DNA of 63,692 nucleotides, counting the filler, from Octopus bimaculoides (Eukaryota), in assembly GCF_001194135.2 (NCBI RefSeq). It is 5 parts of 4 records of this genome, joined end to end, with 100 filler letters (N's around TTAATTAATTAA, not from the genome) between each part and the next. Parts side by side here need not be neighbours in the genome. Positions count along the whole stretch, not along the records: positions 1 to 24,467 come from NC_068986.1; 4 more parts are not named here. One strand, given 5' to 3'. A program made the position numbers and the translations under genes. Numbering within the stretch: position 1 is the first letter of the stretch; the number at the start of each line of letters is the position of its first letter. Below, piece after piece: positions 1-22,831 of this stretch. The notes below the pieces were generated by a model, which saw only the letters and a list, made by a program, of their open reading frames with translations, was not told where the DNA came from and ran no database searches.

Positions 1-19
1 GAGTATAATAATAATTAAT

Positions 20-1456: not shown

Positions 1457-1737
1457 GTTAGTTTATTTTCTTACTTTTACATTACATACATATATATGTA
1501 TGCACACACATAAACACTCATTTGCACATGTGAGTGGGCTCACAGCGATAAGGTTATGGGTTCAATTTCTGGTCCTTTCAGTGTATTGTGTCCTTCTCCA
1601 CTCAGCTGAAAGTGAGAACTACTCAGCTGCTGGTACATCTCTCTTTCCCTCCAGCTTCCAAAATTTCTGTTTGCAGCTAAATAGGCACTTAAAACAACTC
1701 ACAAAAGATTGTTACAAGCTTCCAGATCACACATTTG

Positions 1738-1768
<31 letters not shown>

Positions 1769-2628
1769 CAAATGATATATGAGCATATGCATGTATACAT
1801 ACATANNNNNNNNNNCCTACATCTACATGTATATATAGATACATATCCGGGTACAGGATGTCAAAAAAGGAACGGGAACATAAACAAAGCACAAAAACGG
1901 ACTTTTTTTACGGACAACAGAATGAACACATAGGGAAACAGACGAGCCACTTATGGAACTTTTCCTTCATCAGCTGCCTCTATTCTAAACTAGCGTTTCA
2001 TATATATATATACACACAGTTGGGACCAAAAGTTTGGAACATAGGTTTAATTTGCAATATATTATTACTTGGTCAAAAATTTGGAACATAGGTCTGAAAA
2101 TTTTTTTCTTTTTGATATTGAACCACTGAATCAGTTATTAGGTAAGTGTATCTCTATGTTGTATATATTTGAATTGAATCGTACTTTAATGCACAGACAA
2201 ACAGAAAAAGCATATACTGAGTGCATAAATGGACGGAAAACAAAAACAAAAGGTCACTAATTCTTCATCAGTTATCAACCAGATGGTATTACTTAGTTTC
2301 ACACCATTAATGATAAGACATGCTTCCCATGCTGGCAGTTCCCATGAGAGTTGCAAAGAATATTGGACCAAGAACAAACAATACATGGAATGCAGGCGAT
2401 ACAAAAGTAGACATACGAAAGTGAATAAATGTAATTCAAGATGATGGACGAAGGATATATATTGGGTTGGCAAGAAAGTAATTTCGTTTTTCACAAATAG
2501 TTAAATGACTTTAGACAATGTTAGAATTTTTTTCCTTTTGACATTTGATAGTCATTACTTTTAGCTTACTTTAGAAGCAAATTGCATGTAATTTTGTTTA
2601 CAGCTGTTAGCTCAGTGTCAATTTTAAC

Positions 2629-3056
2629 ATGGGAGTGTAAAAATGAACATTTTTGCCATATTTTGTTTTTTTAGTTCCGTAAAGGTAAGAAAGCTGCTGA
2701 GGCTCACAAAAAGATATATGAAGTTTATGGTGTTAATTGCTTAACAGAACACACATCAGAAATGGTTTTAAAAATTCCGATATGGAGAATTTTCACTCAA
2801 AGATGACCCAATGTTCTGGTCGACCTACTGAAATTTGATGACAGAATCAAAGCTATAATTGAATCTGATTGTCATATAACTGTGCGAAAGATTGCAGAGG
2901 GGTTAAATGTATTAAACACAAGAATTGAAAATCACTTAAAATGTCTTGGACTAATTAAGAAGCTTGATATTTGGGTTCTACATAAATTGAAAGAGATTCA
3001 CTTAACACAACAAATCAATATTTGTGATATGCATCTCAAATGCAATGAAATTGCCC
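2629..3056 (+). mobile_element. Degenerate mariner transposase fragment (N-terminal HTH region)
   Basis: Broken frames read FRKGKKAAEAHKKIYEVYG, SGRP, ITVRKIAEGLNV and LDIWVLHKL (WVPH-like), typical of mariner. Confidence 0.85.
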
Positions 3057-3192
3057 TTTTTTCTTTGCCACACTGGATTGGAACTGAGTTTATCATTGAG
3101 AATATTGTCATTGAAGCTAATGATTATGTGATTATTTTGGAGTTAAATTCTTAGATTTATGTCAATGTTGTTGTTCTTTGTTATTACAACAG

Positions 3193-3320
3193 GGCCATCA
3201 CCAAGATAAATATCTACCTATACCAGCAACAGAATCTGCTCCACTTTATCAGTACACACCTCTTCTGATTACAATGCTTGGACCCAAAGTACCAACAGTA
3301 CAAGAATTGCAGTTACATGG
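3193..3320 (+). CDS. Gene 1 penultimate coding exon, GHHQDKYLPIPATESAPLYQYTPLLITMLGPKVPTVQELQLHG, phase 0-2
   Basis: Acceptor caacag|GGC, consensus donor TGG|gtaagt, 128-nt open frame, phases match both neighbours. Confidence 0.85.
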
Positions 3321-4926
3321 GTAAGTAATATGCTAGATCTGAACTTGGATTATTAATATTTTTTTACCTTGATTAAGATTAATATTTTTAATATGAAATA
3401 TTAGCATTTTCAGACAATATTTAGTAATCGCAGTCTTTAATTTCCTCTTGAGAGTTTTTTTTTTTTTCTTAAAAGAAGGAAACTATTTTCCTTGATGTTC
3501 TACATATTGAAACAGCTTTTTAAATTTAATTATTACTGCATCTGAGAGGACACTCTTGTTCACGAAAGTGTCACAGATAAGCATATTTAATGTTCATTTT
3601 GAGTTCATTGTTTAATGTTTCGAAGGGAATTAAAAAAAATTTTTTTTGCCATTTATTTCTTTAGAAATAGACTTTGTCAAAATTCAAATTTTAGCCCTGA
3701 TCTATATGGATGAAAAACTTCCATTATGACATACTATAAGCATGGGAGGTATTAGATATTAATAAAGCATACTTCCAACTGTCTCTGGCACTATAGACTG
3801 CATATAATTGGAAGCCATTTATTTGAGTAATAAATACTCATCAGAACACTTAGGACTCTGGTTCACCAAACATTTACATTTTATTTTATATTTTTTTATC
3901 TCAACTAAATAGTAAAGTTCCTTCCTCATCATTGTCGTTTAACATGCACTTTTCCATGCTTGCATGGGTTAGACAGAATATGTTGAGGCAGATTTTCTAT
4001 GGATGGATGATCTTATTGCCAACCCTCACCTGTTTCCAAGCAAGGTAATATTTCCCCATAACCAGACATATTTTTCATGGAAACAACATCACTTGTATGA
4101 TGGTGGTGCCTACATACAATTATCACTTGATGTCAAGACAAGGGTACACACACGTCATCATCAGCCTGGGCTCTGTGTCTGTTAAGGCATGGTTGCTATG
4201 ACTGGATGCCCTTTGTAACACCAACTGAGTGCTTTTACGCAGCACCTACATGAATGCTTTTACATGGCACTAGCATGGGTGCTTTTTATGTGGCTCCAGC
4301 ACCCATGAGCCTACAAGGTTAGGATTGCTCATCTGAAGAGGTATGTAGGGGATGTCTGTATGCTAGGACAACTATGATAAGAAACTATTCTAAGAGTGCG
4401 TCCTGCCTTATCTTCAAAACTCCTAGTTTAGAATAGAGGCAGCTGATGAAGGAATAATTCCACAAGTGGCTTGTTTGTTCTCCTATGTGTTCGTTCCGTT
4501 GTCTGTAGTTCATTTTTCTAACGTCTCGTACCCGAATATGCATCTATATGCACATGTAGATGTAGGTATGTACATATATGTGTGTATACATGCATATGCT
4601 TATATATCCTTTGTATTATGATTTTACTTAGCTTGATGTAAGCTTTCTCAGTTTCCGTCTACCAAATCCACTGACAAAGCTCTAGTTGGCTGGTGGGTGT
4701 AGTAGAAGAGAACTTGTCCAAGGTGCTTTGCAGTGGTACTGAGCCCGAGATGCAAGCTTCTTAATTTCAGAGCTACACCTGCACCTTAGTAAAGCTGGAA
4801 AAAAATACCTTCAATTCAAGGCAAATGGAAATAATTTCTTTAGATTCCTACAGACTTAGAAATTTAGGCTATAATTAATTATGTGAGGAATTATGTATAA
4901 TGATTTCTTTGGATTTTGTTGAACAG

Positions 4927-5038
4927 GTACCTTAAAAATATTCGGTCAGCAACAGCAATGGAACTTGCTGGAGGATTCCATGATACTGTTGGCTGCAAGA
5001 GAGCATTGGAAGATGCATTTTGTGGACTTTATTTCTAA
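4927..5038 (+). CDS. Gene 1 last coding exon, (G)YLKNIRSATAMELAGGFHDTVGCKRALEDAFCGLYF*
   Basis: Acceptor ttttgttgaacag|G completes the phase-2 GG|G codon and the frame ends at TAA 5036-5038. Confidence 0.85.
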
Positions 5039-5098: not shown

Positions 5099-6139
5099 AA
5101 CAAATTATTTTCTGATCATAAATTAGTGCTCTTTCTAATTACTCATTTAGACTTGATCCATTCCATGTTTACCCTGAGGTATCATATCATTTCTTCTCTA
5201 TTTATTATTACTACTAAACACAAAAGGTTTCTCCCTAATCTTGCCTTTCAAAAATATTTCTCAGGCGTAGAAATGACATTATTCACTAATTAATTATTTG
5301 TTTTAAGGATTCACCAATTTTGTTTTCTTGATTTCATTCTAATGTCTGCAGTGAGTGTTGTAATCCACTGGATTGAAATAGCAGTCAAATCACCCTTAAA
5401 TCACATACATTAATATTTGTAGTTCTACATATCCCTAAAAAGATGGAATGGTTATTGATCGTGAGTCTATTTGATCAGATATGACCTGGGTTGAAACAGT
5501 GTGTATTATGGGAAAATCAGCTTCATCAGTGCCCATCTCACCAAACTACTCCAACAAAAAAAGGTTGGACTTTATATTGCTAATTTTACAGTGTTGCTGC
5601 TATTTGAAAAGGTAAAAGTTATTTAGCTTCAGCTACTTGGAAAGGGCCAACTGTCTTGATCCTGAACAAAAACTACTCTTTATTGAAAACTTAGTGAATG
5701 CAATTGAAATAACATTTAATATATATAGAGAGAGAGAGAGCGAGCGGCATATGTACACTTTGTCTCTTATATGTAAGTACACATTTTTCTAAATCTTGTA
5801 TGACTCTATTTCTGTCTATCAGCCCCTTCACCCTTATTCGTTCCCCCTCGCTCACATTTCCTTGCCTTCTCTTCTCCCTCCACTTTTCACTTTACTGTGT
5901 CCCTGTCATTTTTTCTCACTACCTCTCTCTCTTCTCTCCCCATGTGACCGGTGTTCNNNNNNNNNNNNNNNNNNNNNNNNNNNNNNNNNNNNNNNNNNNN
6001 NNNNNNNNNNNNNNNNNNNNNNNNNNNNNNNNNNNNNNNNNNNNNNNNNNNNNNNNNNNNNNNNNNNNNNNNNNNNNNNNNNNNNNNNNNNNNNCCATAT
6101 ACGCCAGCTTTAATTTTATTTGTCCTTAGTCAAAAGACA

Positions 6140-7795: not shown

Positions 7796-7987
7796 TTACT
7801 TGTCTGCTTTAAGCTTTAAACTCTTCATGTTCTTGCGGAAATGGTATGGTAAATCAGCTTTTATGAACAGGTTTTTACCATCAAGTAGTTGAGGGAGAAT
7901 TATAATTTTTGAATGGAGATGCATTGGTATGTAACGTACTTTACTTTGTCGAACATTTAAGCGCTGTAATATTTCTGGAAACAAACG
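7796..7987 (-). CDS. RPUSD4: RPUSD4-like exon 9 (terminal), RLFPEILQRLNVRQSKVRYIPMHLHSK...LKADK*
   Basis: Acceptor tctttttcag|CGT, SKxRYIPxHLH motif, TAA at 7798-7796. The nine exons sum to 1881 nt (626 aa + stop). Confidence 0.95.
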   Translation of the reverse strand, partial: RLFPEILQRLNVRQSKVRYIPMHLHSKIIILPQLLDGKNLFIKADLPYHFRKNMKSLKLKADK

Positions 7988-8115
7988 CTGAAAAAGACCA
8001 AAATAACATTATTAGTTAGAATGTGAAATCTTGGTTGGTCTTGATGATAAATTAAATACTTGAACACTTCACAAAAATTTCGTCAGCACTCTTAATTCAA
8101 TGTTAATTCAGAGAT

Positions 8116-8490
8116 GTGGAGGCGCAATGGCCCAGTGGTTAGGGCAGCAGACTTGCGGTCATAGGATCATGGTTTCGATTCCCAGACCGGGCATTGTGAG
8201 TGCTTATTGAGCGAAAACACCTAAAGCTCCACGAGGCTCCGACAGGGAATGGTGGCGAACCCTGCTGTACTCTTTCACCACAACTTTCTCTCACTCTTAC
8301 TTACTGATTCTGTTGTGCCTGTAATTCAAAGGGTCAGCCTTGTTACACTTTGTCATGCTGAATATCCTCGAGAACTATGTTATGGGTACACGTGTCTGTG
8401 GATTGCTCAGCCACTTGCACATTAATTTCACGAGCAGGCTGTTCCATTGATCGGGTCAACTGGAACCCTTGATGACGGAGTGCCAACAAC
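8116..8490 (+). mobile_element. tRNA-derived SINE with an 11-bp TSD
   Basis: A-box-like tggcccagtgg, B-box-like ggtttcgattcc, (aac)n tail. aattcagagat flanks both sides (8105-8115, 8491-8501). A related copy lies near 49840-50160. Confidence 0.9.
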
Positions 8491-9362
8491 AATTCAGAGA
8501 TATCATAATCTTTTACATCCATACTAGCAAAAGTTGGATCAGACTAATCAAGGCTGTTTTCAACAGCCAGATTCTCTTCCTGATGACAAATTTCTTTCAA
8601 TGGTTTTCACAAGTTATGAGATGTATTGTTTACAGGACACATACATAAAGTCTCATTGTTTTTACTCAAATGAGGACAAAGTGAACACATGGAAACAAGC
8701 ATGGATGGATGGAATATATTTAGGCAAATTTTCTACAGCTGGATGCCCTTCCTGTTGCCAACACTCACCTCTTTTCAAGCGAGATAATATTTCTGCAAGA
8801 ACATGACTAGATATGTTCTTACAAGATACTTGTAATGAATGGTATGGCTTGTATAACTGGGACAATGATTTACAACTATCACAAGACAATAGTTGGGAAG
8901 CAAATTTCTCAACCACAAAGCTATATCTGATGATATTCCATACAGTTTCCATCTATCAAATTTCACACACAATATACTGGTTGGTCTGATGCCTGTCCAA
9001 GGTAACACAGAGGGATTGATACTAAAACCACTTGGTGGTGAAAGAAATCTTACAACCACACCACCATCCCTATACTTTAGTATAAGCTATGGAAACTGAA
9101 AAGGTCAATTTAATATGTTGTTTCCTTGCACTTGTGAAAAAAAATGAACATTTTCTATACTGCACTAAAACTGGGAATTATTTTTACCAGTCAGCCACAT
9201 GAACTTTTCTTCAATCATTTATTGGTTCAAGATCTTAAATGTTTTCAGCAATATTTCATTCACAAAAGATCACTATGAATTATCAAGTCATACTTTTATG
9301 TGCTTGACCTTTTCTTAGTCTAATATGACAGACAAATTTACAGAAACACAAAGATTATTTAC

Positions 9363-9460
9363 CTGAGGAGCAAGTTTGTTAATATGTGAATATTTGTGGT
9401 CTCCAATAATAGGTGTGTTAAGACCAAATGCTAAATGAACTCGAACTTGATGCTTGACAC
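9363..9460 (-). CDS. RPUSD4: RPUSD4-like exon 8, GVKHQVRVHLAFGLNTPIIGDHKYSHINKLAPQ, phase 1-0
   Basis: Acceptor tttttcag|GT, donor CAG|gtaaat. GxxHQxRVH and PIxGDxKY motifs, closely resembling vertebrate RPUSD4 as recalled. Confidence 0.97.
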
Positions 9461-10203
9461 CTGAAAAAGAATCAGTTTTAAAGTTGCTATTAAAAAGAAA
9501 GAAAAAAACTATTAAAAAACAGTGCCATATTTTCCACATACAAGCTGAATTTTATAGACCAGAATTTACACTTGAAAAAGGTAAGCTGATTTTAGAGGAA
9601 CAAAATTTCCATGTGAAATGCAGGAAGATTTGGAAAGATAGTGATGATGTTTGAATGTTTACATGTGTTTATACAATGTATTGAGTTGACTTGTATGTCA
9701 GAAAATATGGTAAACTGTTTTCTACCAGTAATGGGGAGTGGGGGCGATACATGTAAATTTGATATAATACTCCAAGTTAATAAGTTTGTCTTCAATAAAA
9801 AATAAAGTTAACATTTTAAAACACTGTATTAATATACACAATTCTCGTGTTAAAACATATTCCCTGTCTAAGTATTTTTCTTTAAAGTCAAATTTCTATG
9901 AAGCTAGCAATAAAAATTATGGCTTCAGACAGCTATAGACTCACATTGTTAACACAGGGAAGCAAAATTTGTAAACATTAAAAAAAAAAAAAAAAAAATC
10001 AACCTTACTCTTTTACTTGTTTCAGTCAGGTGACTGTGGCCATGCTGGAGCACCGCCTTTAGTCGAGCAAATCGACCCCAGGACTTATTCTTTGTAAACC
10101 TAGTACTTATTCTATCGGTCTCTTTTGCCGAACTGCTAAGTTACGGGGACATAAACACACCAGCATCGGTTGTCAAGCAATATTGGGGGGACAAACATAT
10201 ACG

Positions 10204-10243
<40 letters not shown>

Positions 10244-10670
10244 TACATATACATGATGGGCTTCTTTCAGTTTCTGTCAACCAAATCCACTCACAAGGCT
10301 TCAGTTGGCCCGAGGCTGTATTAGAAGACACTTGCCCAAGGTGCCACGCAGTGGGAATGAACCCGGAACCTTACGAAATTAGTTTTAATGACAGCAACAA
10401 GGACTAATGTAAAAACATTAGTTTCTTCTGACTGGCATAAATGCCTCAAGTTTTATAGAAGTAGAGAAGTGAGATGTGGCATTCAAGTATTTTGTATCAT
10501 AAGATTTAAGACCAGCAACTGATCCTTGGTTACCTTAAGTGGAAGCCACTCTCTTACAAGCATGCAGACCAAATATCTAGTCTTTCCCTTGGTCTTGAAA
10601 ATATACAAAGGTACTACACTTATTCTTCTAAATCACATAAAAGAGAATTTAACCAGGAATTGAACAGTGC

Positions 10671-11054
10671 GGCTATCCTTCGTTTTAATTATAATTCTTG
10701 TCAACTGAAGCACATGCTTTTGTTTACATCTAATCGGCCTTTTCCGTAAAGGAGGGATGGGAAATGACTGGGGAAGACGGTACGGTGAGCCTTTTCTGCT
10801 TTGCATAACCATTGACTAAAGAGGAAGTTTCATAGATACAGAAGAAAGCGATGGTCGGTGACCGATAGACAAAGAGAGAGAAAGTTTCATAGATACAGAA
10901 TATATTTTTAACAAGTTATGCAAAGCAGAAAAGGCTCACCGTACCGTCTTAACCCAGTCATTTCCCATCCCTCCTTTACAGAAAAGGCCGATTAGATGTA
11001 AACAAAAGCATGTGCTTCAGTTGACAAGAATTATAATTAAAATGAAGGATAGCT
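10671..11054. mobile_element. MULE/Foldback-like MITE with about 138-bp TIRs and a 9-10-bp target-site duplication
   Basis: Arms 10672-10809 and 10915-11053 are near-perfect inverted repeats. (t)gaacagtgc is directly repeated at 10661-10670 and 11054-11063. Confidence 0.88.
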
Positions 11055-11168
11055 GAACAGTGCTTTTTGAGCTCCATTTGTTGAGATGCTACATCACTTG
11101 CATTTACAGCCTTATGAAAATATATTAAAATAAGGAGAAACTGCATCAAACAATTCAAAGAGAATTAC

Positions 11169-11310
11169 CAGTCTTTGGTTGGCATTCCACTAAAGCACTT
11201 TCATATGATTTACACAATACTTTGTAGCGAGTAACAGCTTCAAATCGTTTCACTGAACTTTTCTTCATTACCAATCGAGTTTCTTCAGTGTAGTCAGGTT
11301 TCAGAACCAT
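11169..11310 (-). CDS. RPUSD4: RPUSD4-like exon 7, MVLKPDY...EAVTRYKVLCKSYESALVECQPKTG, phase 0-1
   Basis: Acceptor ccctctaag|ATG, donor CTG|gtaatt. AxTxYxV and the start of motif III. Confidence 0.95.
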
Positions 11311-11668
11311 CTTAGAGGGAACAGTAAAAAAAAAAAACATTGGTGCAGAATAAAGGTATTTTATACACATCGTTTATAGCCAGCAGAACAAAATAAAGCT
11401 GGTAAGTGTTTAATGAATAGGACAAGCAACATACTTGATTATTTAAGATTTAATGAAGTATTTCTATTATGTTGAGTATAGTTTCAGAGTAGAAAGCAGC
11501 TATTAAAGTAAGTTATTGACTATGTGAGAAGGCTTTAGTATCCTAATATAATTGCATAGAGGAATTTGATGTAGGTAAGCATATATGTATGTTTTATATG
11601 TGTGTATATCATCATCATCGTCATCATTTAATATCCGCTTTCCATGCTGGCATGGGTTGGACCATATT

Positions 11669-12880
11669 TATTAGGCCATCCCATAAACAATGTGGTCTTT
11701 TTTATTGCATGAACTAGAAGTCAGAGAGGGATGGGATAAACTAACTGCATCAACTTGCTATAAAAGCAGATAGTAATTTCACCTTGTCCTTATTCTTAGT
11801 GCAAGTTTTGAAGAGTGTAGCTCGATTTTAAGCTATTTTTTCAAAGTTATAATGGAAGTGACAAAGGAGCATATTCAGCATATTTTGCTGAATGAGTTCA
11901 ATAAAGGCAACAATGCAACAGAAAGTGCGAGGAATATCAATGCAGTATATGGAGATCAGAGAATAAGCGTAAGCCAGTGTCAACAGTGGTTCCAGAAACC
12001 CGAGCGACAAACTACAGTGTATAAGATAAACCTCATCCTAGAAGATCTGTAGAGCTCAACAAGGATGTCCTGCAAACCCTGGTGGAACAAAATTCCATCA
12101 TAACTGTTGAGGAACTAGAAGAGAATCTTGGATTTGGTCAGTCAACCATTCATTGACACCTGCGTGCCATCGGAAAAGTCAGCAAATTGGATCAATGGGT
12201 TTCTCACAAACTTCCTGAGTCTAATTGCACACAGAGAGTGAATGTGTGCCTTTCTTTTCTGTCACATCTCACAAATGAACCTTTTTTGGACCGAATAGTG
12301 AATAGTGACGACAAATGGGTTCTCTATAAAAATGTCAAGCACTGGAGACAGTGGGTAGGGAAAGGAGGAACACCGGCACCCCAGGCTAAAGAAGGTCTTC
12401 ACCCACGTAAAGTGTTGTTATCTGTTTGGTGGGATATGAAAAGTTTAGTCCATTTTGAACTTTTGAACCCAAACCAAACGATAACAAAGGAGATCTACTG
12501 TGAGCAGCTTGAGTGGCTTAAGTCAGTGCTAGAAGAAAAACGACCATCTTTGGTTTCAAGATGAAAGGTGTTCTTTCACGAGGATAATGCTCAGCCACAT
12601 ACAGCAAGGATGACATCCCAAAGGCTGGAGCAGTTTGAATGGGAAATGACGTCCCACCTACCATATTCGCTGGACATTGCCCCATCTGATTTTCATTTAT
12701 TCTACAGTCTTCAAAATCATTTGAACAGAAAAAATATGAATTCTGTAGATGAGGTCAGAACAGTACTGGAGGAGTATTTTTCATTACAGACAAGTGAATT
12801 TCAGAAGAGGGGACTTGCAAGTCTACCAGATAGATAGATAGAAGAGCATTGTAGAAAATGAAGGAGAGTATATTTTAGAT
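11669..12880 (+). mobile_element. Near-full-length defective mariner (D,D34D) in RPUSD4 intron 6, antisense to the gene
   Basis: ATG 11852 (MEVTKEHIQHILL), DDKWVLY, FHEDNAQPH, then exactly 34 residues to APSDFHLF. Frameshifts and stops are present. 5' TIR-like tattaggccatccc; no 3' TIR seen. Confidence 0.93.
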
Positions 12881-13326
12881 TGTGGAAAAAAAAATTCCTA
12901 TCTTATTGATATGCAACATCTTCCAAGGCTATCCTTGTTCAATTCATTCTAATTAAGTACTTCATCAAAACTCTTTCCATAACCTTGCTAAATGCAATGA
13001 CTGAAGTTGGTTTTGTCTCCAAGAAGATTTGAACTTAGGAATGAAAGTGAAAGAAAAACAAGTTCTCCAACGCCCTAATGCAATAAACTGTAACTGTTTG
13101 TGGTATTTATTTACAAATAAGTGACAGTTAAGTGTTTTAGTAAGCAATACTGTGCACTGGTAGCAATGGGTTAAGTATCTTCAACCCAAGAATGGTAGGT
13201 TGGCACCTTAATAACCTAGCAAAATATCAATGGGTATTTATTATCAGCAATGAATTCCACTCATTAATTGTAATTCAATGTACTGATGTGAATTATATAT
13301 GATTAGAAGTAAAATCTTAAACTTAC

Positions 13327-13376
13327 TCTTGATTTCCCATCAATTGATCCTTCAGCGATTGGGATATCAATAATTC
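13327..13376 (-). CDS. RPUSD4: RPUSD4-like exon 6, GIIDIPIAEGSIDGKSR, phase 1-0
   Basis: Acceptor tttgtcaag|GA, donor AGA|gtaagt. GxIDxPI motif. Confidence 0.93.
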
Positions 13377-13424
13377 CTTGACAAATAAAAAGAAAGTTAT
13401 TATATAAATGGAGAAAATTAAAGC

Positions 13425-13775
13425 ACCCCTCCTCATCTCCAAAAAAAAGCCAAAGTGGTTCCATTTGCAGGGAAGGTGATGGCCTTTGGTTTCTGGGGAT
13501 GCAAAAGGCATTGTATTTATTGATTATCTTCAAAAGGGCCACACCATCAATGGAGGGTATTATGCCAGCTTGCTGTGATAGTTATGAAAGACTATCAAGA
13601 CCAAATGCCCAAGAAAACTGATGAAGGGATCTCTTTTATTTATCAGGAGTGTGATCCAGCACACAAATTCTTGGTTTCAATGGCTGCTATGCTTAACTGT
13701 GATTTTAAACTGGTTGATCATCATCCCTAATCTCTTGATTTGGTCTCATCTGACTATCATCTGTTCTCCAACATG
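13425..13775 (+). mobile_element. Second mariner catalytic-domain fragment
   Basis: Reads as KKAKVVPFAGKVM, FWDAKGIVFIDYLQKGHTINGGYYASLL and SDYHLFSNM across frameshifts. Confidence 0.85.
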
Positions 13776-15138
13776 ACAAATGATTCAGAGTAGCCAGAGG
13801 CATGTATCTGAGCAACAATGATAAGAGCATACTAAATACCATACAAAATAAATCCTAGATCACTGAAATTATCTTTGCTTCCAGAGAAGACTGAACTATT
13901 TGCTTGTTGGTAATTGAGAGCAACTCCTAATGGGAAGGGGAGAAAATCTCACAAATTCTCCAAAATTGACATGTCATTAAGGAAAAGACAGTTTGTATGA
14001 AGACGAGAAGATAGCTGTGAACAGGTGTTCCAGCCACAATAGGCATCATTAGCTCAGCAGTAGCCCTACCTTATCTCCAGCATAATGAGACATTTAGAGA
14101 AAAAAGAACAACATATTTATGGCCTACATAATTTGCATGAATAAAATGAATCAGTGACAATTAATTGTTCTAACTTAGCTGGGAACAAACATAATTTCAA
14201 TAAACCAGTGACACATATTAGAATAAAACAAAGATGATAATGATATACAAAATACCATACAAGGTATATAAAAAAAAACTGGAAGTATCACACAGGTGTG
14301 GATGGAGATTGGTATGAATGCAGAGATATCATCTTAAGCAGAAGGGTTGTGAAGAGAGGACAGTGAGAGAAAGAAACATAGGGAAGTAGTAATGAATGGA
14401 GATTTAATTAGAGAAAGAAAGGCTGGAGGTTTCCATAGTAGTAGAAGAGAGCAGAGGATGAAAGTAGAGACAGCATCCCATGTAGGGAGACAGTTGTGAG
14501 AGGATAATGAGATAGAGACAGGGGAGGAGCAGTGGGTGAATGCAGTAAGAACATCCCAGCCAACAACATTCCTCTCATTAGCATTCATTGTGCAATGCTA
14601 GATCAGGAGAGTGGGTTTTGTACACTACAGCATATCACCAGTTATTGCGGTTGGTTGTCAACAACTCTGTGAGGCTTAACATATTGGAATTGGTTTCCAC
14701 TATTCCATGTCTTTCTAAGTGTTTCTCTTCTACTGGTATCATCCACTTTGTGCATGCAGTACCTTTTTATGCAATTATCTTCACCTATGCACATTATATG
14801 CCCATACCATGATTCCCTCTATACGTAGCTTTTCTCTGGAATTGAAAGGCCTTAAAGTAAACTAGCCATCACAAAAATTATAACAAATAGAAAAAGAGAC
14901 AGGACTCTGATGCATCAGGAAAACAATCATGTTTGCCATGCAGAAAAGAAGTAGGTAAAAACTCTTTACAGCATGCTCATTGTAAATAATGGTCACATAA
15001 AATAATGATGACAATGACAGCAAATGGTACTAAGAAAATATTTTTGATTTAGAAAATGATTTTAAAAATCCACAAAAATTAAAATAAGTTTGTTTTGGAA
15101 TCTGAGATAGTCAGAAATTTTAGAGGCATAATACATAC

Positions 15139-15239
15139 CAATATCAGGATTTGGTACACCTTTAGTTATGGCCCAGTACTTTTTGATAACTTCTTGTTCT
15201 CTGAACATCTTATGAAGAACAGCTGCCATTTCTGCTGTC
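15139..15239 (-). CDS. RPUSD4: RPUSD4-like exon 5, TAEMAAVLHKMFREQEVIKKYWAITKGVPNPDIG, phase 2-1
   Basis: Acceptor ttcacatag|G, donor TTG|gtatgt. Contains the KxYWA motif (conserved Tyr of RluA family). Confidence 0.95.
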
Positions 15240-15351
15240 CTATGTGAAATATAATTTTAAAAACAAATCATTTATTATTAGCTGTCTTCTGATGAAAGAA
15301 TAACTGAATAGACAGAGAGTGGGGGAGAAGTGCCAAGGAAAATACTGTTAC

Positions 15352-15481
15352 CTTGCAAGTAAGAGAACCCCTGTGGTTTCTTTGTCAAGGCGATGGATAA
15401 GATGGAGTGTTCCTTTGTGGTAAATCTTAGCTGCAAGTTCTGGTAGTAGATCTGCTAGACTCACATGTACACCGGGACCAC
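15352..15481 (-). CDS. RPUSD4: RPUSD4-like exon 4, GGPGVHVSLADLLPELAAKIYHKGTLHLIHRLDKETTGVLLLAR, with catalytic Asp motif HRLDKETTG
   Basis: Acceptor cctttag|GT, donor AAG|gtaaca. HRLDxxTTG is the RluA/RPUSD catalytic motif II. Confidence 0.97.
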
Positions 15482-16038
15482 CTAAAGGTAAATATATTGT
15501 ATAACAAAAATGAAACATGTTCCTTCCTACCAGCAATTAAACTGAAATTCTAAATCAAAAAATTATCATAATTATTTTTAACATTAGCAAAAGTCTGTCA
15601 TGCTCCTACATGAACCACATAAAGATACCTTCATTAATTTGTTGCCAATTGTTATTGACCACAAATTAATGAAGGTGACCTTTCATGGCTCCTAGAAATA
15701 GGAACCATAAATAAGGAAAGGATATTAGATTATATAGTTTTACATTTCCTTAAATAATATTTACTAGCTGTAGACAATTTTGTCATCTCATTGAACTGTT
15801 ATTCTCAGTCCACTGGCTCTAGATAATTTAGTCCATTAATTTACTGTTTCTTTGCTCACTAGTTCTAGTTAGAAGGTGCTATGAACACACTAATAATAAA
15901 AGCATTCAGTGATGGATGATTATGTAGTCTTTCTTGAAAGTATATAACAGTTTCTTAGGCAAAAGTGAGCAAAGATAAGGGTAAGTAAAGGATATGTATT
16001 TGACTCCATAATATATATATTTCTGTTACTTTATAATA

Positions 16039-16760
16039 TACTAGCAGAAATACCCGGCTTTGCCCGGGTTAAAGAGAATAATGAAATCTAAAAACGCCGT
16101 CTAGACTACGCAACCCTCAACTGTTAGTAGCTACGATACCATATTTCTACATTAATAACTCTCCAATCCATGCCAGCATTCAACATAGACATTAAGTGGA
16201 ATGCCAGTCTCTCATCTAGGAGGGCCTTGAAATCAATGTTACCAACTGGGGACTATGTGTGTCGTAGTGATAATAAAAAGACCCAAAGGAGGTCTGCAAC
16301 GAAATAATTTTACTCAACACTTTGCAAGTGAATCAGTGGAGGCAAAGATGCGTCTCATTTACTTGACAATTTATGCACCACATTGCAGAAATNNNNNNNN
16401 NNGGTGTACATATACATGTATATGTATACATATACATCTCTCTCTCTCTCTGTGAAAGTATCTGTCACTACAGTATCGAAATGTGATTGTTTCAGTTAGT
16501 GGAATAGTTTCATTTTTAAAGTGAAAGTATTTGACATGAGTGTTTTTGTTTCACTTTTGACACTTAATACTTAAATAGTGGAGGAGATATTATGTTGCCG
16601 TGTGCTCGAACTCTGCAAGAAGTTAATAATTTTTTTTTACTAAAACACAACTGGAACCCTAAGTAAGGCATATGTAAAATTTGAATGAAATTGGTTGCGT
16701 AGTTCTCGAGTTTTAGGGATTCACACAGACAGACACACATTCTCATTTTTATATATATAG
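16039..16760 (+). mobile_element. Helentron/HINE (DINE-1-like) non-autonomous element
   Basis: 5' tactagc...cccggctttgcccggg short inverted repeat, internal microsatellite, 3' gaaattggttgcgtagtt...acagacagac...tttatatatag end. Confidence 0.65.
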
Positions 16761-16898
16761 ATATATATCCTGCATTATAGCTACATCATACTACGGGATT
16801 TTGTACTTACAGAATTATAAAGTATTATTAATATGGGGATATGGTCTGCAATAGAAACTCAAATAAATTGTAACAGTTCCTTATGGAAACTCAAACTT

Positions 16899-17100
16899 TT
16901 ACAATTATTTCATCATCGTCGTCTAACGTCCGTTTTCCATGCTGGCATGGGTTGGATGGTTTGACTGAGGTCTGGAGAACCAGCAGATTGGGCTCTGGTG
17001 TAGCCGCTGGCTCTCCAGACTGCAGTCAAACCGTCCAACCCATGCCAGCATGGAAAATGGACGTTAAACGATGATGATGATGATAATGAAATAATTGTAA
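16899..17100. repeat. Compact fold-back of two RTE-tail SINE ends in opposite orientation (RPUSD4 intron 3)
   Basis: Arms about 16899-16984 and 17006-17100 are reverse complements with a few mismatches; loop about 21 nt. Confidence 0.9.
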
Positions 17101-18237
17101 CAGTTTAAAAGTTACACTTTTCCTTCACCAAAAATGCTGTTTTATCTAACATCAAATATAGTTGATTGGAAAAACTAGTCACAATATATACATACATGTG
17201 TATATGTGTGTACACAGGTGTTTGTGCCTCTTGTGTGAGGTACATGGACAGGTGAGCGAGCAAATAAGTCTCTGTTCATTTGTCTATCTTAGATATAGTT
17301 GTCAAGAAGTGGGCTGCATGAGACCTGGCTCATAATTAGGTAGGCTAAACTGCCACAAAAATCCAAGGTAATTTTTTGTTCAGTGTGTTGTTCAGAAAGT
17401 CCTGCAGATTGCAGGTTGCCCAAATGCCCACCCATCTGCCTAGGAATGAAATGAAACCCTCAGATTTGAATGGTGTTTGGGAAAAAAAAACACGGCTAGG
17501 CTGTATCTGTGACTTTACAAATATTCCAAGAAAAGAAAGCTTACATCAAATTCACAAAGATATCATGACATTTGCAAATAAAGTAGGATGATGTGGTCGT
17601 GCTCCATAGAGAAAGTTTAAGGAGGAGCTGGTGCAAAAATACAGGTTGAGAATACAAATACTCCAAAAATTCCACTTGAATTGATTGCTAAGAGTTGGCA
17701 CTCAGAGGAACATCTGCAAATTTTTGCTGATAACAAGTCTAATTGTGAATGTAACATAGAAATCATGAGAAGTTTACCAATTTACAATGAGCAGTTCCTT
17801 TACTGAACAAAGAGATGATGCACCATAAAAATCGAACAATTTCTTCACCATTCAAGATAATGATGATGATGATGAATTATAGGATAAATAATGTCACTCA
17901 TCCTCTCAGTAACTCATTCTGCTGCTATCCTTCCTTCAGTAACCAGCACCTTTTGTGGAAAGAACATACCATACCCTTTTCTGATATGACAACTGTTATT
18001 TATTCTACAAAGTTGTTCTCAAATGTTATGTATGCATATTGTTCCATGGAACTGCCATGACATTTCCCCCAACATGAAGATAAAGGTGTACAATGCCGCA
18101 GTGCTCCCATGCCTCCTGAAAGTATTTCAACTGCAAAACATCTTCACACATTTGAATGTATGTTGAATACATCTAATATGACTTTTAACAAATATATTTC
18201 AATCCTGCTTTGTGTGACTTTAGCCAGTTTGCGTGCA

Positions 18238-18305
<68 letters not shown>

Positions 18306-18847
18306 ATGGACTTAATATGTTTACTAAATTCACTCACAAAATATTAATCAATCAGGGGCTTTAAAAGAAGACACTTACCCAAGGTGCCACATAGTGGGAC
18401 TGAACTCAAAACCAAGTAGTTGAGAAGCAAAATTCTTAACTATACAGCTCACACTGACTAATTTTAGGGTGTGACTTGTAGGAAATATGGTGACTATTTC
18501 TAGCAGGCCAAGTGATTGTGTAAAGCAGTGATTTTCAACCTTTTGCAATCCAAATACTAAAACTGGAGTAGTTTGTCATTGCCTTGCTGAAGTTATATTA
18601 CATAAGAAACAAAATTTAATTATTTTTGAAGTGGAAATGGGTAACATATTACACTTTACCACTAAACAATAAATACTTTGACATTTCTGAAATGTCTTAA
18701 AACTGTGCAGTATATTTGGAAAGCATAAGTGTCACTGGTTAGAAAAGTCAGGTGTAAAGGCTCTTTCATTAGCTTGATATATTAATGAGGTTGTTAAGGC
18801 ATTTACTGACTTTAAATAAATGATAGGTTTCATAAATATCAACTTAC

Positions 18848-18892
18848 CATGAGAAGACAGGCCATATGGCTTATTGATAGCAACAATGTCAT
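18848..18892 (-). CDS. RPUSD4: RPUSD4-like exon 3, NDIVAINKPYGLSSHG (RluA motif I), phase 1-1
   Basis: Acceptor tgttacag|AT, donor CATG|gtaagt. NKPxGL is the RluA-family motif I. Confidence 0.95.
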
Positions 18893-20255
18893 CTGTAACA
18901 TAAAATAAGGAAATACATTTCATATTCTTTCATTTTTATTATTCAACCCTTTTATTACCATATTTCTGTTGAGATGCTCTGTGTTTCTTTCAATTAATTT
19001 TATAAATATAACAAAGAATTTAGTAAAATAACTTAGTTATCATTAAGCTTGTGTTAGGAACATAAATTGTGACTAAATGTTGGTGGAAGATTTTAATTTA
19101 GAACTTTTGAGAACAAGACATTTATGTTAAAATCAAATTACGATAAACGTAAACAAACAAACAAAGTTTGCTTTTAGAAGCATTGAGATGTCTTAGAAAG
19201 TTAAAGTGATTTTAAATTCTCAAACGCAGGATAATGCTTATTATATAGCCTGAACAGGATAAACTACCCTTATTTTGCAGAAAAAAGTGTGGGCGGCCAG
19301 CCATGAGACATTTATACTAGAGCCAGAGGTGGTTTCAGCTGGGTTGGTATCAAAAGGGTTAAGAAATAAAGGTGGTGAACTAGGAAACTCATTACTGCAC
19401 CAGAAAAATTACATTTCTTCCCGCTTTATGTTCTGATTTCAAATGCCATCAAGGTTGACTTTGCCTTTCATTGTCTTGGGGTTAATTAAAAAAGAACCAG
19501 TTGAATACTGGAGTTGATGTAACCCACTAGTCCCTCCCCACCAAATTTCAGACATTGAGCCTATAATAGAAATGATTATATAAAAATAAAGAATGCAGAT
19601 TCATTAAACCAAATATTTAAAATAAATGAATAGAATATTGCATTAATTGTTAGCAATAGTATTATATAATTAGAGCCTAACGAGTAATTGAGTTTGTTTT
19701 TCATAACTTCATGAATATTAATAACATTACCTACACATTGGTAATAACATTACCAATACAATAGAATATTAATAACATTACCTAAAACTTCTATCACGGA
19801 TTAAAATAATTTTCCTAGAATTGTAATATCCATATTTTCATACCAGTATACATTGCACTGAGCTGTAATGAATTTCAATCCTGTGTTATGCTATCAACTT
19901 GACCCACCACTCAGGTCTGATCATATCACCTCCACTCAGGACCTCTGATTTACTCAGTTGACCACTCATCACCTATACTGTTTCCCTTGCAAGACTTTCA
20001 TGTCACCACTTTTCTAAATCTCCTCTCTCCAGAATATTATCCCTCTGGAATTACCTCCCTCCCAACATTGCTTCCTGCAACTGTCAGCTTTCTATTATCA
20101 AGAGAGCCAACTTTGATAGAAACAATAGTGACAATTCTCTAAACTGCATTCTTTCATTCTATCTCAATGTTAGTCAGCAGTAATGTCACCCTCTTCCAAT
20201 GTTAACCACCAAACTATTGGTAGCTCTCCATCAGCACCCATATTATCTTCTCTTT

Positions 20256-20453
20256 TTTAAATAATGTTACTCATGAATTTGCATCAGATGAAAACTTTAT
20301 CGATTCGCAATATTTCAACAAACCGATGTCCGGAACAACAGATGAGCAACCGTTGTTAGAACTAAATTCTACACATCGAGCACATTCTTTGGCAGAGAAT
20401 AAAGAAGATTTGCAAAGAGAAAATCAAAATTTTATTGATAATCAATATTTTGG
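20256..20453 (+). repeat. Inverted duplicate of part of RPUSD4 exon 1 (22017-22214) inside intron 2
   Basis: Manual block-by-block comparison gives 197/198 identity to the reverse complement of 22017-22214. The single difference is 20282 C vs 22188 A. Confidence 0.97.
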
Positions 20454-21063
20454 GTGTAATTTTAATTAATTAAATATTGTTTCTAGCTTCCTAATTTTAT
20501 GTTCACCAACTTTCTACTTTATTATATATATATATGTGTGTTTTATGCAGTGCTAATAAAGTGATTACTGTTGCAATATTTGTATCATAGCCATACAAAC
20601 TGTTCTCGATTTTGTTTTACATCCATTTTTTCATGCTAGCATGGCTTAGATGACTATGTATTGAGACAATGTTTTCCATTTTACAACTGCCCTTCCTGTC
20701 AGTATTTCACACTATTTTTCAAGTAAGGGATTTAAAGTTTTGTTTTATTCAGCAAGTTTTCAAAAGTGCAGAGCTAAATGACTCATTGGCATGGAATGAT
20801 ACCAAACTTCACTGTTACTCAACACAGAATGTAAACATTCATAGACATGCATGCACACACAAGCTTCTGTACAGTTTCTGTTTACCAAATTTACTCACAA
20901 AACATTAGTTGGTCGAAAGCTATAGTAGAAGATGTCACACAGTGAGACTGAACTAAAAGCCATATGGTTGAGAAGCAAACACCTTAACCACATAGCCAAG
21001 CCTGCACATATATATCGAATAAATATAAAGAAAACACAAAAATGCAATAAGAGTTATACTTAC

Positions 21064-21189
21064 TCTTATTATAAATAATTCTGCTTTTAATATGATTTAC
21101 AATTTCATAGCTTGTCAGTTTAGTTAAATCAGTAACTTGGTCTTTCAAAATACGGAAACCCTTACTGTCTAAAAGAGGACCGTCAGGAT
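21064..21189 (-). CDS. RPUSD4: RPUSD4-like exon 2, DPDGPLLDSKGFRILKDQVTDLTKLTSYEIVNHIKSRIIYNK, phase 1-1
   Basis: Long polypyrimidine acceptor (ccacag|AT), donor AAGA|gtaagt, 126-nt open frame. Confidence 0.88.
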
Positions 21190-21834
21190 CTGTGGTAGAA
21201 ACCGAGTAAAGAATGAGAAGAAATATCTGGAAATATCACAGTTGAAATAAGGGTAGCAATAAAATAAGAGCTACAGAAATAAATGGGACAGAAACAGAAA
21301 GGACTTAGCATATTTAGAGCCACAGTAATTTCAACCAATTCAGAAGTCCCAAGTTTAATTAACGAAGCCTAATTCGAACATGCATTTTCTGGCTACTTTG
21401 TTCATTGGTGATTTGGAAATGAAATGTAGATTTGATGCTTATAAAGAGGAATGCACAAAAAAAAAAAAAAACTATATAGAAAACTAGCTGAAAGACCTCC
21501 CCCAGGCGGTTTTCTGCTAGCCACTTGATAATATCTTCACATTTGATTCCCATTTCTAATAATTTTTATGATATTGTTTGCCGTCGTGCCTTTGCTGCTA
21601 AATGTTCTTTTTCTGTCGCACATTTTGGCATGCGGGTTCAAGCGAAAGAATACCCATATTTTTTAGACGTCCCATGTAATGCGATATTTGTGTAATAACG
21701 AAATCAAACCTGGTGTTTATGTTACAGAGACAGTGTGTTTTTATATTAGAGAGATAGTGTGTGTGTGAAAGAGAGTTGGGGAGAGAACTACTGCAAACAA
21801 TGAATGAAATAAACCCAAAGATAATGCAATTTAC

Positions 21835-22831
21835 CTCGAACATTTTCCTTCCGAAGTTTTTTTCGAATCTTCATAGCTACATTAAATGCATTCTCTGTTT
21901 CCTCCTCATGGGTAGGTGGTTTTGACTGAGCCTTTATTTCAAGAGGTTCTTCTTTAGTCAAAACAGGTTCAATCTTTTTCAGGACAGTTGATGCTCCTTC
22001 GTTTTGATCGCTAAGGCCAAAATATTGATTATCAATAAAATTTTGATTTTCTCTTTGCAAATCTTCTTTATTCTCTGCCAAAGAATGTGCTCGATGTGTA
22101 GAATTTAGTTCTAACAACGGTTGCTCATCTGTTGTTCCGGACATCGGTTTGTTGAAATATTGCGAATCGATAAAGTTTTCATCTGATACAAATTCATGAG
22201 TAACATTATTTAAATTATGATTCTGGCTTCTGTGCAAATCCTTATCTTCTAAGTCCATTAAGATATGGTTAGCAGATGACGAAGTAATTTTTTTATTATC
22301 TATTAATCCCTTCGATTCGGAAGTATATTCGGTTCGTGAAAAATATTGATTATCGATATATTCAAACTCTGAGTTCTTATTGCTGGAAGCATCTAATTTA
22401 CGAAAATTGGAAATATTACTTTCGGTCTCTGTAGAAATTCTGTTATCAAATGACGAGTCTCCTAAATGAACGTCATGTTTCTCTCTTACCATTTTATCAG
22501 CAAGGGTATGTTTATTATAAGAATCTAGTCGTATACTACCAAACGGTACTTGAAAAACTTTTTCAAGCGATGGGTCTGATATCTTATTGGTCATTTTAGG
22601 TAAATATTTTCCGTATATATAATCTTTATCTACAACTTCATCAACCTTTTCAGATGGTTGACCGAGGGAGTCCTTTTCACTGATTCCAAAGAAGTCTTCT
22701 TCCTCTGCAGAATCAACAGACGAAGAGTATTTCTTAATTAACGGTATACAATTCCAAACATTTCGACATAACTTTTTTCGCTTAAGAAAATAATGAAAAT
22801 GAAGACACTGTCGAAGCTGTGACGGGTTCAT
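21835..22831 (-). CDS. RPUSD4: RPUSD4-like coding exon 1: presequence-like N-terminus plus long acidic extension (332 codons + 1 nt)
   Basis: ATG at 22831 opens the longest clean ORF in the window (347 aa). The donor CGAG|gtaaat gives a phase-1 join to exon 2. An acceptor-like ttatcttattccag just upstream (exon start 22838) implies an upstream 5'UTR exon. Confidence 0.88.

What the first reader, a model, noticed from the sequence alone, without database searches (positions are those of the whole stretch)
20256..22214. Coding exon 1 of RPUSD4 has its own near-perfect inverted copy in intron 2: candidate editing-complementary sequence
Seen in sequence: 20256-20453 is the reverse complement of 22017-22214 at 197/198 nt. 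In the pre-mRNA the one difference puts an intronic G opposite an exonic U (codon GUA), a wobble pair. A 198-bp uninterrupted duplex can therefore form over codons LNNVTHEF...NFIDNQYFG. The 1563-nt loop holds the exon 1 donor, intron 1 and symmetric exon 2. There is no TSD, no poly-A tail and no TE sequence in the copy, so it looks like a templated insertion rather than retroposition. Established: ADARs edit long exon-intron duplexes, and coleoid cephalopods recode mRNAs extensively by A-to-I editing. Inference: this could be a newly born editing-complementary sequence that diversifies the A-rich N-terminal extension, an endo-siRNA source, or a splicing modulator. It would be an RNA-modifying enzyme regulated by RNA structure.
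Basis: partly seen in the sequence, partly recalled or inferred. Interest (0 to 1): 0.88.

Follow-up and report, generated by a model that had tools for sequence, protein, structure and literature searches.

The report
Young inverted exon copy in octopus RPUSD4
In the Octopus bimaculoides genome assembly, 198 bases of the first coding exon of the mitochondrial RNA-modifying gene RPUSD4 are repeated backwards in a downstream intron; the copy is real in the sequence, very recent and absent from three related species, and nothing yet shows that it has a function.

Summary
20256-20453 is the reverse complement of 22017-22214 at 197/198, and the one difference gives a G·U wobble in the pre-mRNA. 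The host gene is a nine-exon RPUSD4 orthologue on the minus strand. The window is identical to the O. bimaculoides assembly GCA_001194135.2. One arm lies in exon 1 (codons 206-272) and the other in intron 2.

Comparison with other species adds the main new result. O. sinensis, O. vulgaris and Argonauta hians each carry the exon segment once, with no inverted copy. At the orthologous intron site the flanks align at 93-94%. There the copy replaces about 8-11 nt of an A-rich stretch. It has no target-site duplication, no tail and no transposon sequence. It carries the O. bimaculoides exon alleles plus one derived change.

So this is a single, very recent inverted intragenic duplication, of the kind made by template switching or fold-back repair. 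It would let the pre-mRNA form a perfect 198-bp duplex (about -333 kcal/mol).

That duplex resembles a substrate for promiscuous hyper-editing more than an evolved, site-selective editing-complementary sequence. It covers two conserved FIDxQYF motifs. Exon-2 skipping is also annotated in O. sinensis, which lacks the copy.

Function is untested. An artefact of the single short-read assembly is not excluded.

The parts
22017..22214 (-). Exonic arm: RPUSD4 exon 1, CDS nt 618-815, codons 206-272. It includes conserved motifs NFIDSQYF and NFIDNQYFG.
20256..20453 (+). Intronic arm: copy of the exon segment. It reads in exon sense on the + strand, so it is antisense within the minus-strand pre-mRNA. 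It lies in intron 2, 610 nt after the exon 2 donor and 1363 nt before the exon 3 acceptor. Its one derived difference is at 20282.
20454..22016 (-). 1563-nt loop between the arms: 3' end of exon 1 with its donor, intron 1, exon 2 and the start of intron 2. It contains a SINE-like fragment at about 20879-20996.
20242..20255 (-). Retained part of the ancestral A/G-rich target stretch (sense AAAGAGAAGATAAT) next to the copy. The sister species have AAGCAG(A)10GA(AGA)TAAT here, so about 8-11 nt were replaced. There are 0-3 nt of possible microhomology (AAA).
20454..20470 (-). Other junction: sense ...AAAATTACAC|CCAAAA. The flank is conserved in O. sinensis and O. vulgaris up to the last C. No microhomology and no TSD.
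21835..22831 (-). RPUSD4 exon 1 (ATG at 22831; donor GAG|gtaaat).
21064..21189 (-). RPUSD4 exon 2: 126 nt, symmetric. It encodes the invariant DSKGFRILK motif and is skipped in annotated isoform X2.
18893..21063 (-). Intron 2 (2171 nt), host of the inverted copy.
7796..22831 (-). Whole RPUSD4 coding region: 9 exons, 626 aa. The model has the length of XP_014776811.1 isoform X1, and isoform X2 (P0001) reads the same as the model apart from the skipped exon 2.

Best explanation
This is a very young inverted intragenic duplication specific to O. bimaculoides. One mutational event copied 198 nt of RPUSD4 exon 1 in reverse complement into intron 2, 1.56 kb downstream, overwriting about 8-11 nt of an A-rich intronic stretch. 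The most likely mechanism is a long-range template switch or fold-back priming during replication or break repair, of the FoSTeS/MMBIR or four-point template-switch type. It is not retroposition or transposition.

The immediate consequence is inferred, not shown. Until intron 2 is removed, the pre-mRNA can pair exon 1 codons 206-272 with the intronic copy in a perfect 198-bp duplex. In an octopus such a duplex would be expected to attract ADAR and be hyper-edited promiscuously, and possibly diced. I regard it as an unselected, neutral to mildly deleterious by-product, at best raw material for a future editing-complementary sequence. I do not regard it as an evolved regulatory element.
For: Shown:
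- The repeat and its exact ends.
- Gene identity and exon structure.
- Identity of the window to the O. bimaculoides assembly.
- Absence of any inverted copy in the whole RPUSD4 locus plus 10 kb flanks of O. sinensis, O. vulgaris and A. hians.
- Orthologous intron flanks align at 93-94% right up to both junctions. The sister species show AAGCAG(A)10GA(AGA)TAAT plus a dispersed SINE-like repeat where O. bimaculoides has the copy plus AAAGAGAAGATAAT.
- There is no TSD. The A-run beside the copy is ancestral target sequence, not a tail.
- The copy shares all six O. bimaculoides-versus-sinensis/vulgaris differences of the exon. Its single difference is derived in the copy.
- The copy differs from its source by 0.5%, against about 6.7% intron divergence between the species. 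That dates it to roughly the last tenth of the time since the split.
- Duplex energy is -333 kcal/mol, and 197/198 cognate pairs appear in the minimum-energy fold.

From the literature:
- Template switching creates perfect inverted repeats and RNA hairpins in one step, often in introns (PMC5453318; PMC10710096).
- O. bimaculoides has the highest hyper-editing signal among the animals surveyed. That signal is tied to long, nearly perfect intramolecular dsRNA (PMC5625713).
Against: - Everything rests on one short-read assembly of one individual. GCA_001194135.2 has gaps at 1806-1815, 5957-6094 and 16393-16402. No independent O. bimaculoides sequence could be retrieved.
- The event is longer (198 nt) and longer-range (1.56 kb) than the short template switches catalogued in primates.
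- Microhomology at the junctions is minimal (0-3 nt), so the mechanism is inferred from the outcome only.
- A DNA template cannot be told from an RNA template, because the fragment lies within one exon.
- Gene conversion between the arms could make the copy look younger than it is.
- No RNA data were available, so duplex formation, editing and dicing in vivo are untested.
Confidence: 0.6

Rival explanations
1. Assembly artefact. The intronic copy does not exist in the animal. A gap or hard-to-assemble stretch in intron 2 was closed with reads or mates mis-projected from exon 1 about 1.5 kb away, or with a misplaced alternative-haplotype fragment. The sister species have a homopolymer and a SINE-like repeat at this site.
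For: - The assembly is short-read based and gapped (N runs).
- There is only one assembly lineage for the species.
- The copy sits exactly where O. sinensis and O. vulgaris carry an A10 run and a dispersed repeat, a typical contig-break context.
- Near-identity (197/198) is what a false duplication with one heterozygous site would look like.
Against: - Both junctions are continuous sequence, and the nearest N run is 3.8 kb away. K-mer based closure needs reads that span both novel junctions.
- The mismatch is off-centre (position 27 of 198), unlike a SNP bubble.
- The copy is inverted, sharply bounded and accompanied by a small target deletion, as real repair events are.
Confidence: 0.2
2. Functional newborn RNA element. 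The intronic arm would act as an editing-complementary sequence that recodes the N-terminal extension of RPUSD4. Alternatively it would act as a hairpin source of endo-siRNAs that autoregulate the gene, or as a structure that modulates splicing or back-splicing of exon 2.
For: - The duplex is thermodynamically overwhelming.
- The intronic arm is transcribed 1.36 kb before the exon 3 acceptor, which leaves time for pairing (coordinates; the timing is inference).
- The exon arm has 77 A, and 52 of them would recode if edited.
- Octopus has very high ADAR activity on such duplexes (PMC5625713).
- The arms bracket exon 2, and an exon-2-skipped isoform exists.
Against: - The copy is not conserved in any other species examined and is too young to have been shaped by selection.
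- A perfect long duplex predicts non-selective editing.
- The arm covers conserved FIDxQYF motifs whose N, D, Q and Y codons would be hit. The effect would therefore more likely be harmful than diversifying.
- Hyper-editing is reported as extremely rare in coding sequence (PMC5625713).
- Exon-2 skipping is also annotated in O. sinensis, which has no copy.
- No editing record for the gene was found.
Confidence: 0.08
3. Same real insertion, but templated by RNA. A break in intron 2 was repaired by extending the coding-strand 3' end on the gene's own sense transcript, through reverse-transcriptase activity of a repair polymerase or a retroelement. That would also give an antisense copy.
For: - The inverted orientation is exactly what priming of the coding strand on sense RNA would give.
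- The insertion abuts an A/T-rich target.
- The nascent transcript is physically at the locus (inference).
Against: - There is no poly-A, no TSD and no intron-spanning junction that would prove an RNA intermediate.
- The fragment lies inside one exon, so the test is uninformative.
- DNA fold-back explains the same outcome without extra assumptions.
Confidence: 0.1

Closest known systems
Template-switch mutations: four-point model of Löytynoja & Goldman 2017 (PMC5453318); TSM-born RNA hairpins and miRNAs, Mönttinen et al. 2023 (PMC10710096); long-range FoSTeS/MMBIR
   Same: - One event writes the reverse complement of nearby same-chromosome sequence over a short target stretch.
- It instantly creates a perfectly paired hairpin in a transcribed intron.
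- It is lineage-specific and shows up by comparison with sister species.
   Different: - The copy is 198 nt and the source is 1.56 kb away, much larger and farther than the short-range events catalogued.
- One arm is protein-coding exon sequence.
- Microhomology is minimal.
Intronic editing-complementary sequences of site-selective ADAR substrates (for example GRIA2 Q/R, Drosophila Syt1; reviewed in PMC5705066)
   Same: An intronic sequence downstream of a coding exon is complementary to that exon, so a duplex can exist only in the pre-mRNA.
   Different: - Known ECSs are evolutionarily conserved.
- They form short, imperfect duplexes that direct editing to particular adenosines.
- They are defined by observed editing.
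- This one is unconserved, perfect over 198 bp, and has no editing evidence.
Hyper-edited inverted-repeat dsRNA in introns (Alu pairs in human; repeat pairs in octopus; Porath et al. 2017, PMC5625713)
   Same: It is a long, nearly perfect intramolecular duplex formed by two inverted copies within one pre-mRNA, the structure class that accounts for most hyper-editing.
   Different: The arms are not a dispersed repeat family, and one arm is coding. Porath et al. describe hyper-editing in coding sequence as extremely rare.
Hairpin-RNA / endo-siRNA loci and young plant MIRNA genes born by inverted duplication of their target gene (recalled from memory; not checked here)
   Same: An inverted duplicate of genic sequence gives a long perfect hairpin with full complementarity to the parent mRNA.
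   Different: - The hairpin here lies within the parent gene's own pre-mRNA and has a 1.56-kb loop.
- No small-RNA evidence exists.
- It is not known whether octopus processes such a substrate.

Membership tests
RPUSD4 (RluA-type pseudouridine synthase), host gene | PseudoU_synth_2 catalytic domain with the HRLD...TxG motif (catalytic Asp) | tested here: met
   PF00849 at 105.5 bits, E=3.9e-30, residues 377-541. HRLDKETTG is present.
RPUSD4 (RluA-type pseudouridine synthase), host gene | Closest solved relative is RPUSD4 rather than another RluA/RluC/RluD or RPUSD1 protein | tested here: met
   Human RPUSD4 5UBA scores E=8.1e-73; the next hit, RluC, scores 8e-18. Database orthologues are named RPUSD4.
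Editing-complementary sequence (site-selective ADAR substrate) | Sequence in the same pre-mRNA complementary to the exon | tested here: met
   197/198 complementarity with one G·U; duplex energy -333 kcal/mol.
Editing-complementary sequence (site-selective ADAR substrate) | Observed A-to-I editing of the paired exon | not testable with these tools
   No read data are available. No record for this gene appeared in the searched papers or supplements. Liscovitch-Brauer 2017 is not held.
Editing-complementary sequence (site-selective ADAR substrate) | Conservation of the complementary element across related species | tested here: not met
   Absent from the O. sinensis, O. vulgaris and A. hians loci. 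The orthologous site has different sequence.
Editing-complementary sequence (site-selective ADAR substrate) | Imperfect duplex (bulges, mismatches) that confers site selectivity | tested here: not met
   The duplex is an uninterrupted 198 bp with no bulge and one wobble.
Template-switch / fold-back inverted duplication | Inserted fragment is the reverse complement of nearby sequence on the same molecule | tested here: met
Template-switch / fold-back inverted duplication | Ancestral state lacks it, and a single event replacing a short target fragment explains the difference | tested here: met
   Sister-species flanks are collinear up to both junctions, and about 8-11 nt are replaced. The copy carries O. 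bimaculoides alleles. No outgroup intron was alignable, so polarity rests on the exon being the conserved source.
Template-switch / fold-back inverted duplication | Microhomology at the switch points | tested here: inconclusive
   0 nt at the ACAC|CC junction and up to 3 nt (AAA) at the other.
Template-switch / fold-back inverted duplication | Short range (tens to a few hundred bases), as in the four-point catalogue | tested here: not met
   The source is 1563 nt away and the fragment is 198 nt. It fits only the long-range (FoSTeS/MMBIR-like) end of the class, which the four-point authors explicitly leave out.
Processed retrocopy / TPRT retroposition | Poly-A tail at the 3' end of the sense copy and target-site duplication | tested here: not met
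   No TSD. The only A-run lies at the wrong end for a sense retrocopy and is ancestral target sequence present in O. sinensis and O. vulgaris.
Transposable element / MITE | Multi-copy dispersed family with terminal repeats or TSD | tested here: not met
   There are only two copies in the window and four loci. The copy is exactly exon sequence. By contrast, the O. sinensis/vulgaris insert at the neighbouring site hits many places.
False duplication in a short-read assembly | Copy bounded by gaps, or unsupported by independent sequence | tested here: inconclusive
   The copy is not bounded by gaps; the nearest N run is 3.8 kb away. However, no independent O. bimaculoides sequence could be obtained.
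hpRNA / endo-siRNA hairpin | 21-22-nt small RNAs mapping to the arms | not testable with these tools
   No small-RNA data are available.

The most novel reading that the evidence does not exclude
The copy is real and fixed in O. bimaculoides, and it acts as a one-step-born editing-complementary sequence. The exon 1/intron 2 duplex recruits ADAR and heavily recodes the two conserved FIDxQYF motifs of mitochondrial RPUSD4, or it yields siRNAs against its own mRNA. That would be a caught-in-the-act example of how cephalopod recoding substrates can arise by template switching, in a gene that is itself an RNA modifier.
Probability: 0.07. Interest if true: 0.7.

Novelty: new member of a known kind. 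Interest (0 to 1): 0.3.

Why it matters
If real, this is a clean natural experiment. A perfect 198-bp exon-intron duplex was created in one step, with no transposon involved. The animal has the highest known ADAR activity, and sister species supply the 'before' state at single-base resolution. Public matched DNA and RNA data from O. bimaculoides could show directly what ADAR, Dicer and the spliceosome do to a brand-new coding duplex. They could also show whether such events plausibly seed cephalopod recoding sites. If it is an artefact, it is a useful warning for scans for editing substrates in this assembly. Either way it does not, on present evidence, show that RPUSD4 is regulated by RNA structure.

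Tried and rejected
- A protein search with the exon 1 N-terminal extension alone found nothing, although a 100% identical database protein exists. Negative results of that search are therefore unreliable, and I did not use it as evidence of novelty.
- Exact-protein look-ups found no independent contig for the 347-aa exon 1 read-through ORF or for the 47-aa ORF that spans the copy/intron junction. Isoform X2 entries are not indexed.
- Rfam found no known RNA family in the piece.
- Retroposition is rejected: no tail and no TSD, and the A-run is ancestral.
- A TE origin is rejected: the sequence is two-copy and exactly exonic.
- Misplacement of a haplotig or SNP bubble is judged unlikely, because there are no flanking gaps and the mismatch is off-centre. 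It is not excluded.
- 'The IR causes exon-2 skipping' is rejected as a necessary explanation, because O. sinensis has the same annotated isoform without the IR.
- I considered whether the single difference in the copy is a hard-wired editing site, since it is an A-to-G change on the transcribed strand of the intronic arm. One transition carries no weight.
- Literature searches for editing of this gene found nothing: RPUSD4 plus octopus and the supplements of Zhang et al. 2023. A search for exon-derived ECS by inverted duplication also found nothing.
Full report
**1. The observation**

The inverted repeat is exactly as described. The repeat finder reports arms 20256-20453 and 22017-22214: 198 nt, 99% complementary, 1563 nt apart. 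A self-BLAST of the whole piece ranks it first at E=3e-98. The next inverted pairs are a 147-nt pair at 95% and repeat-derived pairs at 70-80%. The homology ends abruptly on both sides.

The only mismatch is 20282 (C) against 22188, which is T in sense. This is the second base of codon 215, GTA. In the minus-strand transcript an exonic U therefore faces an intronic G. Chance is not an issue.

**2. The gene**

Stop-to-stop frames on the minus strand contain the RluA-type motifs HRLDKETTG and KKYWAITKG. I built a nine-exon model with canonical GT/AG sites:

| Exon | Coordinates |
|---|---|
| 1 | 22831-21835 |
| 2 | 21189-21064 (126 nt, phase-symmetric) |
| 3 | 18892-18848 |
| 4 | 15481-15352 |
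| 5 | 15239-15139 |
| 6 | 13376-13327 |
| 7 | 11310-11169 |
| 8 | 9460-9363 |
| 9 | 7987-7796 |

The 626-aa product has PF00849 (E=3.9e-30). Its best solved relative is human RPUSD4, 5UBA (E=8e-73).

Database orthologues identify the species:
- The O. bimaculoides entry LOC106873813 has an isoform X1 of 626 aa (XP_014776811.1), the length of the model.
- Its isoform X2, 584 aa, reads the same as the model apart from lacking exon 2.
- The window is 100% identical to GCA_001194135.2 chromosome CM046606.1.

The exon arm is CDS nt 618-815 (aa 206-272). The intronic arm lies 610 nt into intron 2 and 1363 nt before the exon 3 acceptor.

**3. Comparative evidence**

I fetched the orthologous loci, each the gene plus 10 kb on each side:
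- O. sinensis, L003
- O. vulgaris, L004
- Argonauta hians, L001
- O. bimaculoides itself, L002

The exon arm hits once, in exon 1, in O. sinensis and O. vulgaris (96.5% identity). It hits weakly once in Argonauta. Only in O. bimaculoides does it hit twice. A search with the first 1.1 kb of each gene (exon 1 and the start of intron 1) against its own locus finds no inverted copy in the three other species.

O. bimaculoides intron 2 aligns to both Octopus sister species at 93-94% on either side of the copy. The site reads as follows:

| Species | Sequence at the site |
|---|---|
| All three, left flank | ...AAAATTACAC |
| O. sinensis / O. vulgaris | AAGCAG(A)10GA(AGA)TAAT, then a 260-380-nt element, then ATGGGTGCTGATGG |
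| O. bimaculoides | the 198-nt copy, then AAAGAGAAGATAAT, then ATGGGTGCTGATGG |

The sister-species element is a dispersed SINE-like repeat with many copies in all loci. Its site is empty in O. bimaculoides.

From this I conclude:
- The copy replaced roughly 8-11 nt of an A-rich stretch.
- It has no target-site duplication.
- It shows 0 nt of microhomology at one junction and at most 3 nt (AAA) at the other.
- The A-run next to it is ancestral sequence rather than a retroposition tail.

The copy carries all six states that distinguish the O. bimaculoides exon from both sister species. At its single difference the exon base is shared by all three species, so the change is derived in the copy. 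The copy differs from its source by 0.5%, against about 6.7% intron divergence. That places the event in roughly the last tenth of the time since the split. This is inference, and gene conversion could bias it younger.

**4. How it arose**

The outcome is a reverse-complement copy of nearby same-strand sequence written over a short target fragment. It has sharp ends and no TE or retro hallmarks. That is the signature of template switching or fold-back priming during replication or break repair.

Such events are documented to create perfect inverted repeats and RNA hairpins in one step, frequently in introns (PMC5453318; PMC10710096). This one is larger (198 nt) and longer-range (1.56 kb) than the catalogued short events. 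It therefore sits at the FoSTeS/MMBIR end of the class, which those authors do not model.

An RNA-templated repair using the gene's own transcript would give the same product. It cannot be excluded, because the fragment lies within one exon.

**5. What it would do**

This section is inference. The 1959-nt pre-mRNA segment folds with 197 of 198 cognate arm pairs. The duplex energy is -333 kcal/mol, against -30 for the exon arm alone. The duplex can exist from the moment the intronic arm is transcribed until intron 2 is removed.

O. bimaculoides shows the strongest hyper-editing signal among the surveyed animals. [quoted passage not shown] A perfect 198-bp duplex is therefore expected to be deaminated promiscuously rather than at selected sites.

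The exon arm has 77 adenosines, and 52 of them would change the amino acid.

The arm is not a disposable A-rich linker. It contains two of the three FIDxQYF motifs that are conserved in RPUSD4 N-terminal extensions across cephalopods, a bivalve, a gastropod and a nemertean. Heavy editing would therefore more likely damage the protein than diversify it usefully.

The exon-2-skipped isoform X2 is annotated in both O. bimaculoides and O. sinensis. Skipping therefore does not depend on the repeat.

**6. Artefact question**

All sequence evidence for the copy comes from one short-read, gapped assembly. Its N runs are at 1806-1815, 5957-6094 and 16393-16402.

Three points argue against an artefact:
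- Both junctions are continuous, and the nearest gap is 3.8 kb away.
- The mismatch is off-centre.
- A small target deletion accompanies the insertion.

One point argues for caution. The site coincides with a homopolymer and repeat context in the sister species. I could not retrieve independent O. bimaculoides sequence. I put the artefact at about 0.2.

**7. Comparison with known systems, and verdict**

The element works like an intronic editing-complementary sequence only in geometry. It fails two defining features that I could test: conservation and an imperfect, selective duplex. A third, observed editing, is untestable here.

It fits best in two known classes:
- By origin, it is a template-switch-type inverted duplication.
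- By predicted behaviour, it is a hyper-editable inverted-repeat dsRNA, with the unusual feature that one arm is coding.

It is a new member of known kinds, not a new kind. No literature on editing of this gene was found.

Interest is moderate to low (0.3). The comparative result is clean, and a sharp test with public reads is available. Even so, this is a single, young, probably unselected variant whose very existence still needs read-level confirmation.

Noticed in passing
window 10664-10809 and 10915-11061 (intron 7 of RPUSD4): A second inverted repeat in the same pre-mRNA: 147-nt arms, 95% identical, about 105-nt spacer. The roughly 400-nt unit is absent from the O. sinensis and O. vulgaris loci. 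It looks like a lineage-specific foldback or MITE-like insertion and would also form dsRNA.
   Followed up: partly
window 16893-17106: An imperfect palindrome (about 78% over about 214 nt) made of SINE-like repeat sequence arranged head to head. It lies next to a 10-N assembly gap at 16393-16402.
   Followed up: no
L003 12882-13169 and L004 12871-13279 (orthologous to window ~20242): O. sinensis and O. vulgaris carry a dispersed SINE-like element with internal GGTGCTTTTTACGTGCCACCGGCAC tandem units. It sits 14 nt from the site where O. bimaculoides has the exon copy. The same few bases of intron 2 were therefore hit by two independent insertions in the two lineages.
   Followed up: partly
window 22831-21835 (exon 1 protein, aa 1-332): The long N-terminal extension has no Pfam domain. 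It does contain DFFG, IRLD and three FIDxQYF(G) motifs conserved across cephalopods, a bivalve, a gastropod and a nemertean. They look like uncharacterised short linear motifs of invertebrate RPUSD4.
   Followed up: partly
window 21189-21064 (exon 2): Exon 2 encodes the invariant DSKGFRILK.QV segment. Even so, an exon-2-skipped isoform X2 is annotated in both O. bimaculoides (584 aa) and O. sinensis (583 aa).
   Followed up: partly
window 18318-18448 and 20879-20996: Two direct copies (69-78% identical) of a SINE-like repeat in intron 2 and intron 3. One of them lies inside the loop between the arms.
   Followed up: no
window 1-5038 (+ strand): Part of the neighbouring MAT1/MNAT1-like gene (zf-C3HC4_5, MAT1 and CAK-anch_MAT1 Pfam hits in the locus annotation). 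It is convergent with RPUSD4. The same gene order is seen in O. sinensis, O. vulgaris and Argonauta.
   Followed up: no
tool behaviour: The word-indexed protein search returned no hit for the 332-aa exon 1 product alone. A 100% identical O. bimaculoides protein was found only when the catalytic domain was included, so negative results from that tool should not be read as absence.
   Followed up: yes
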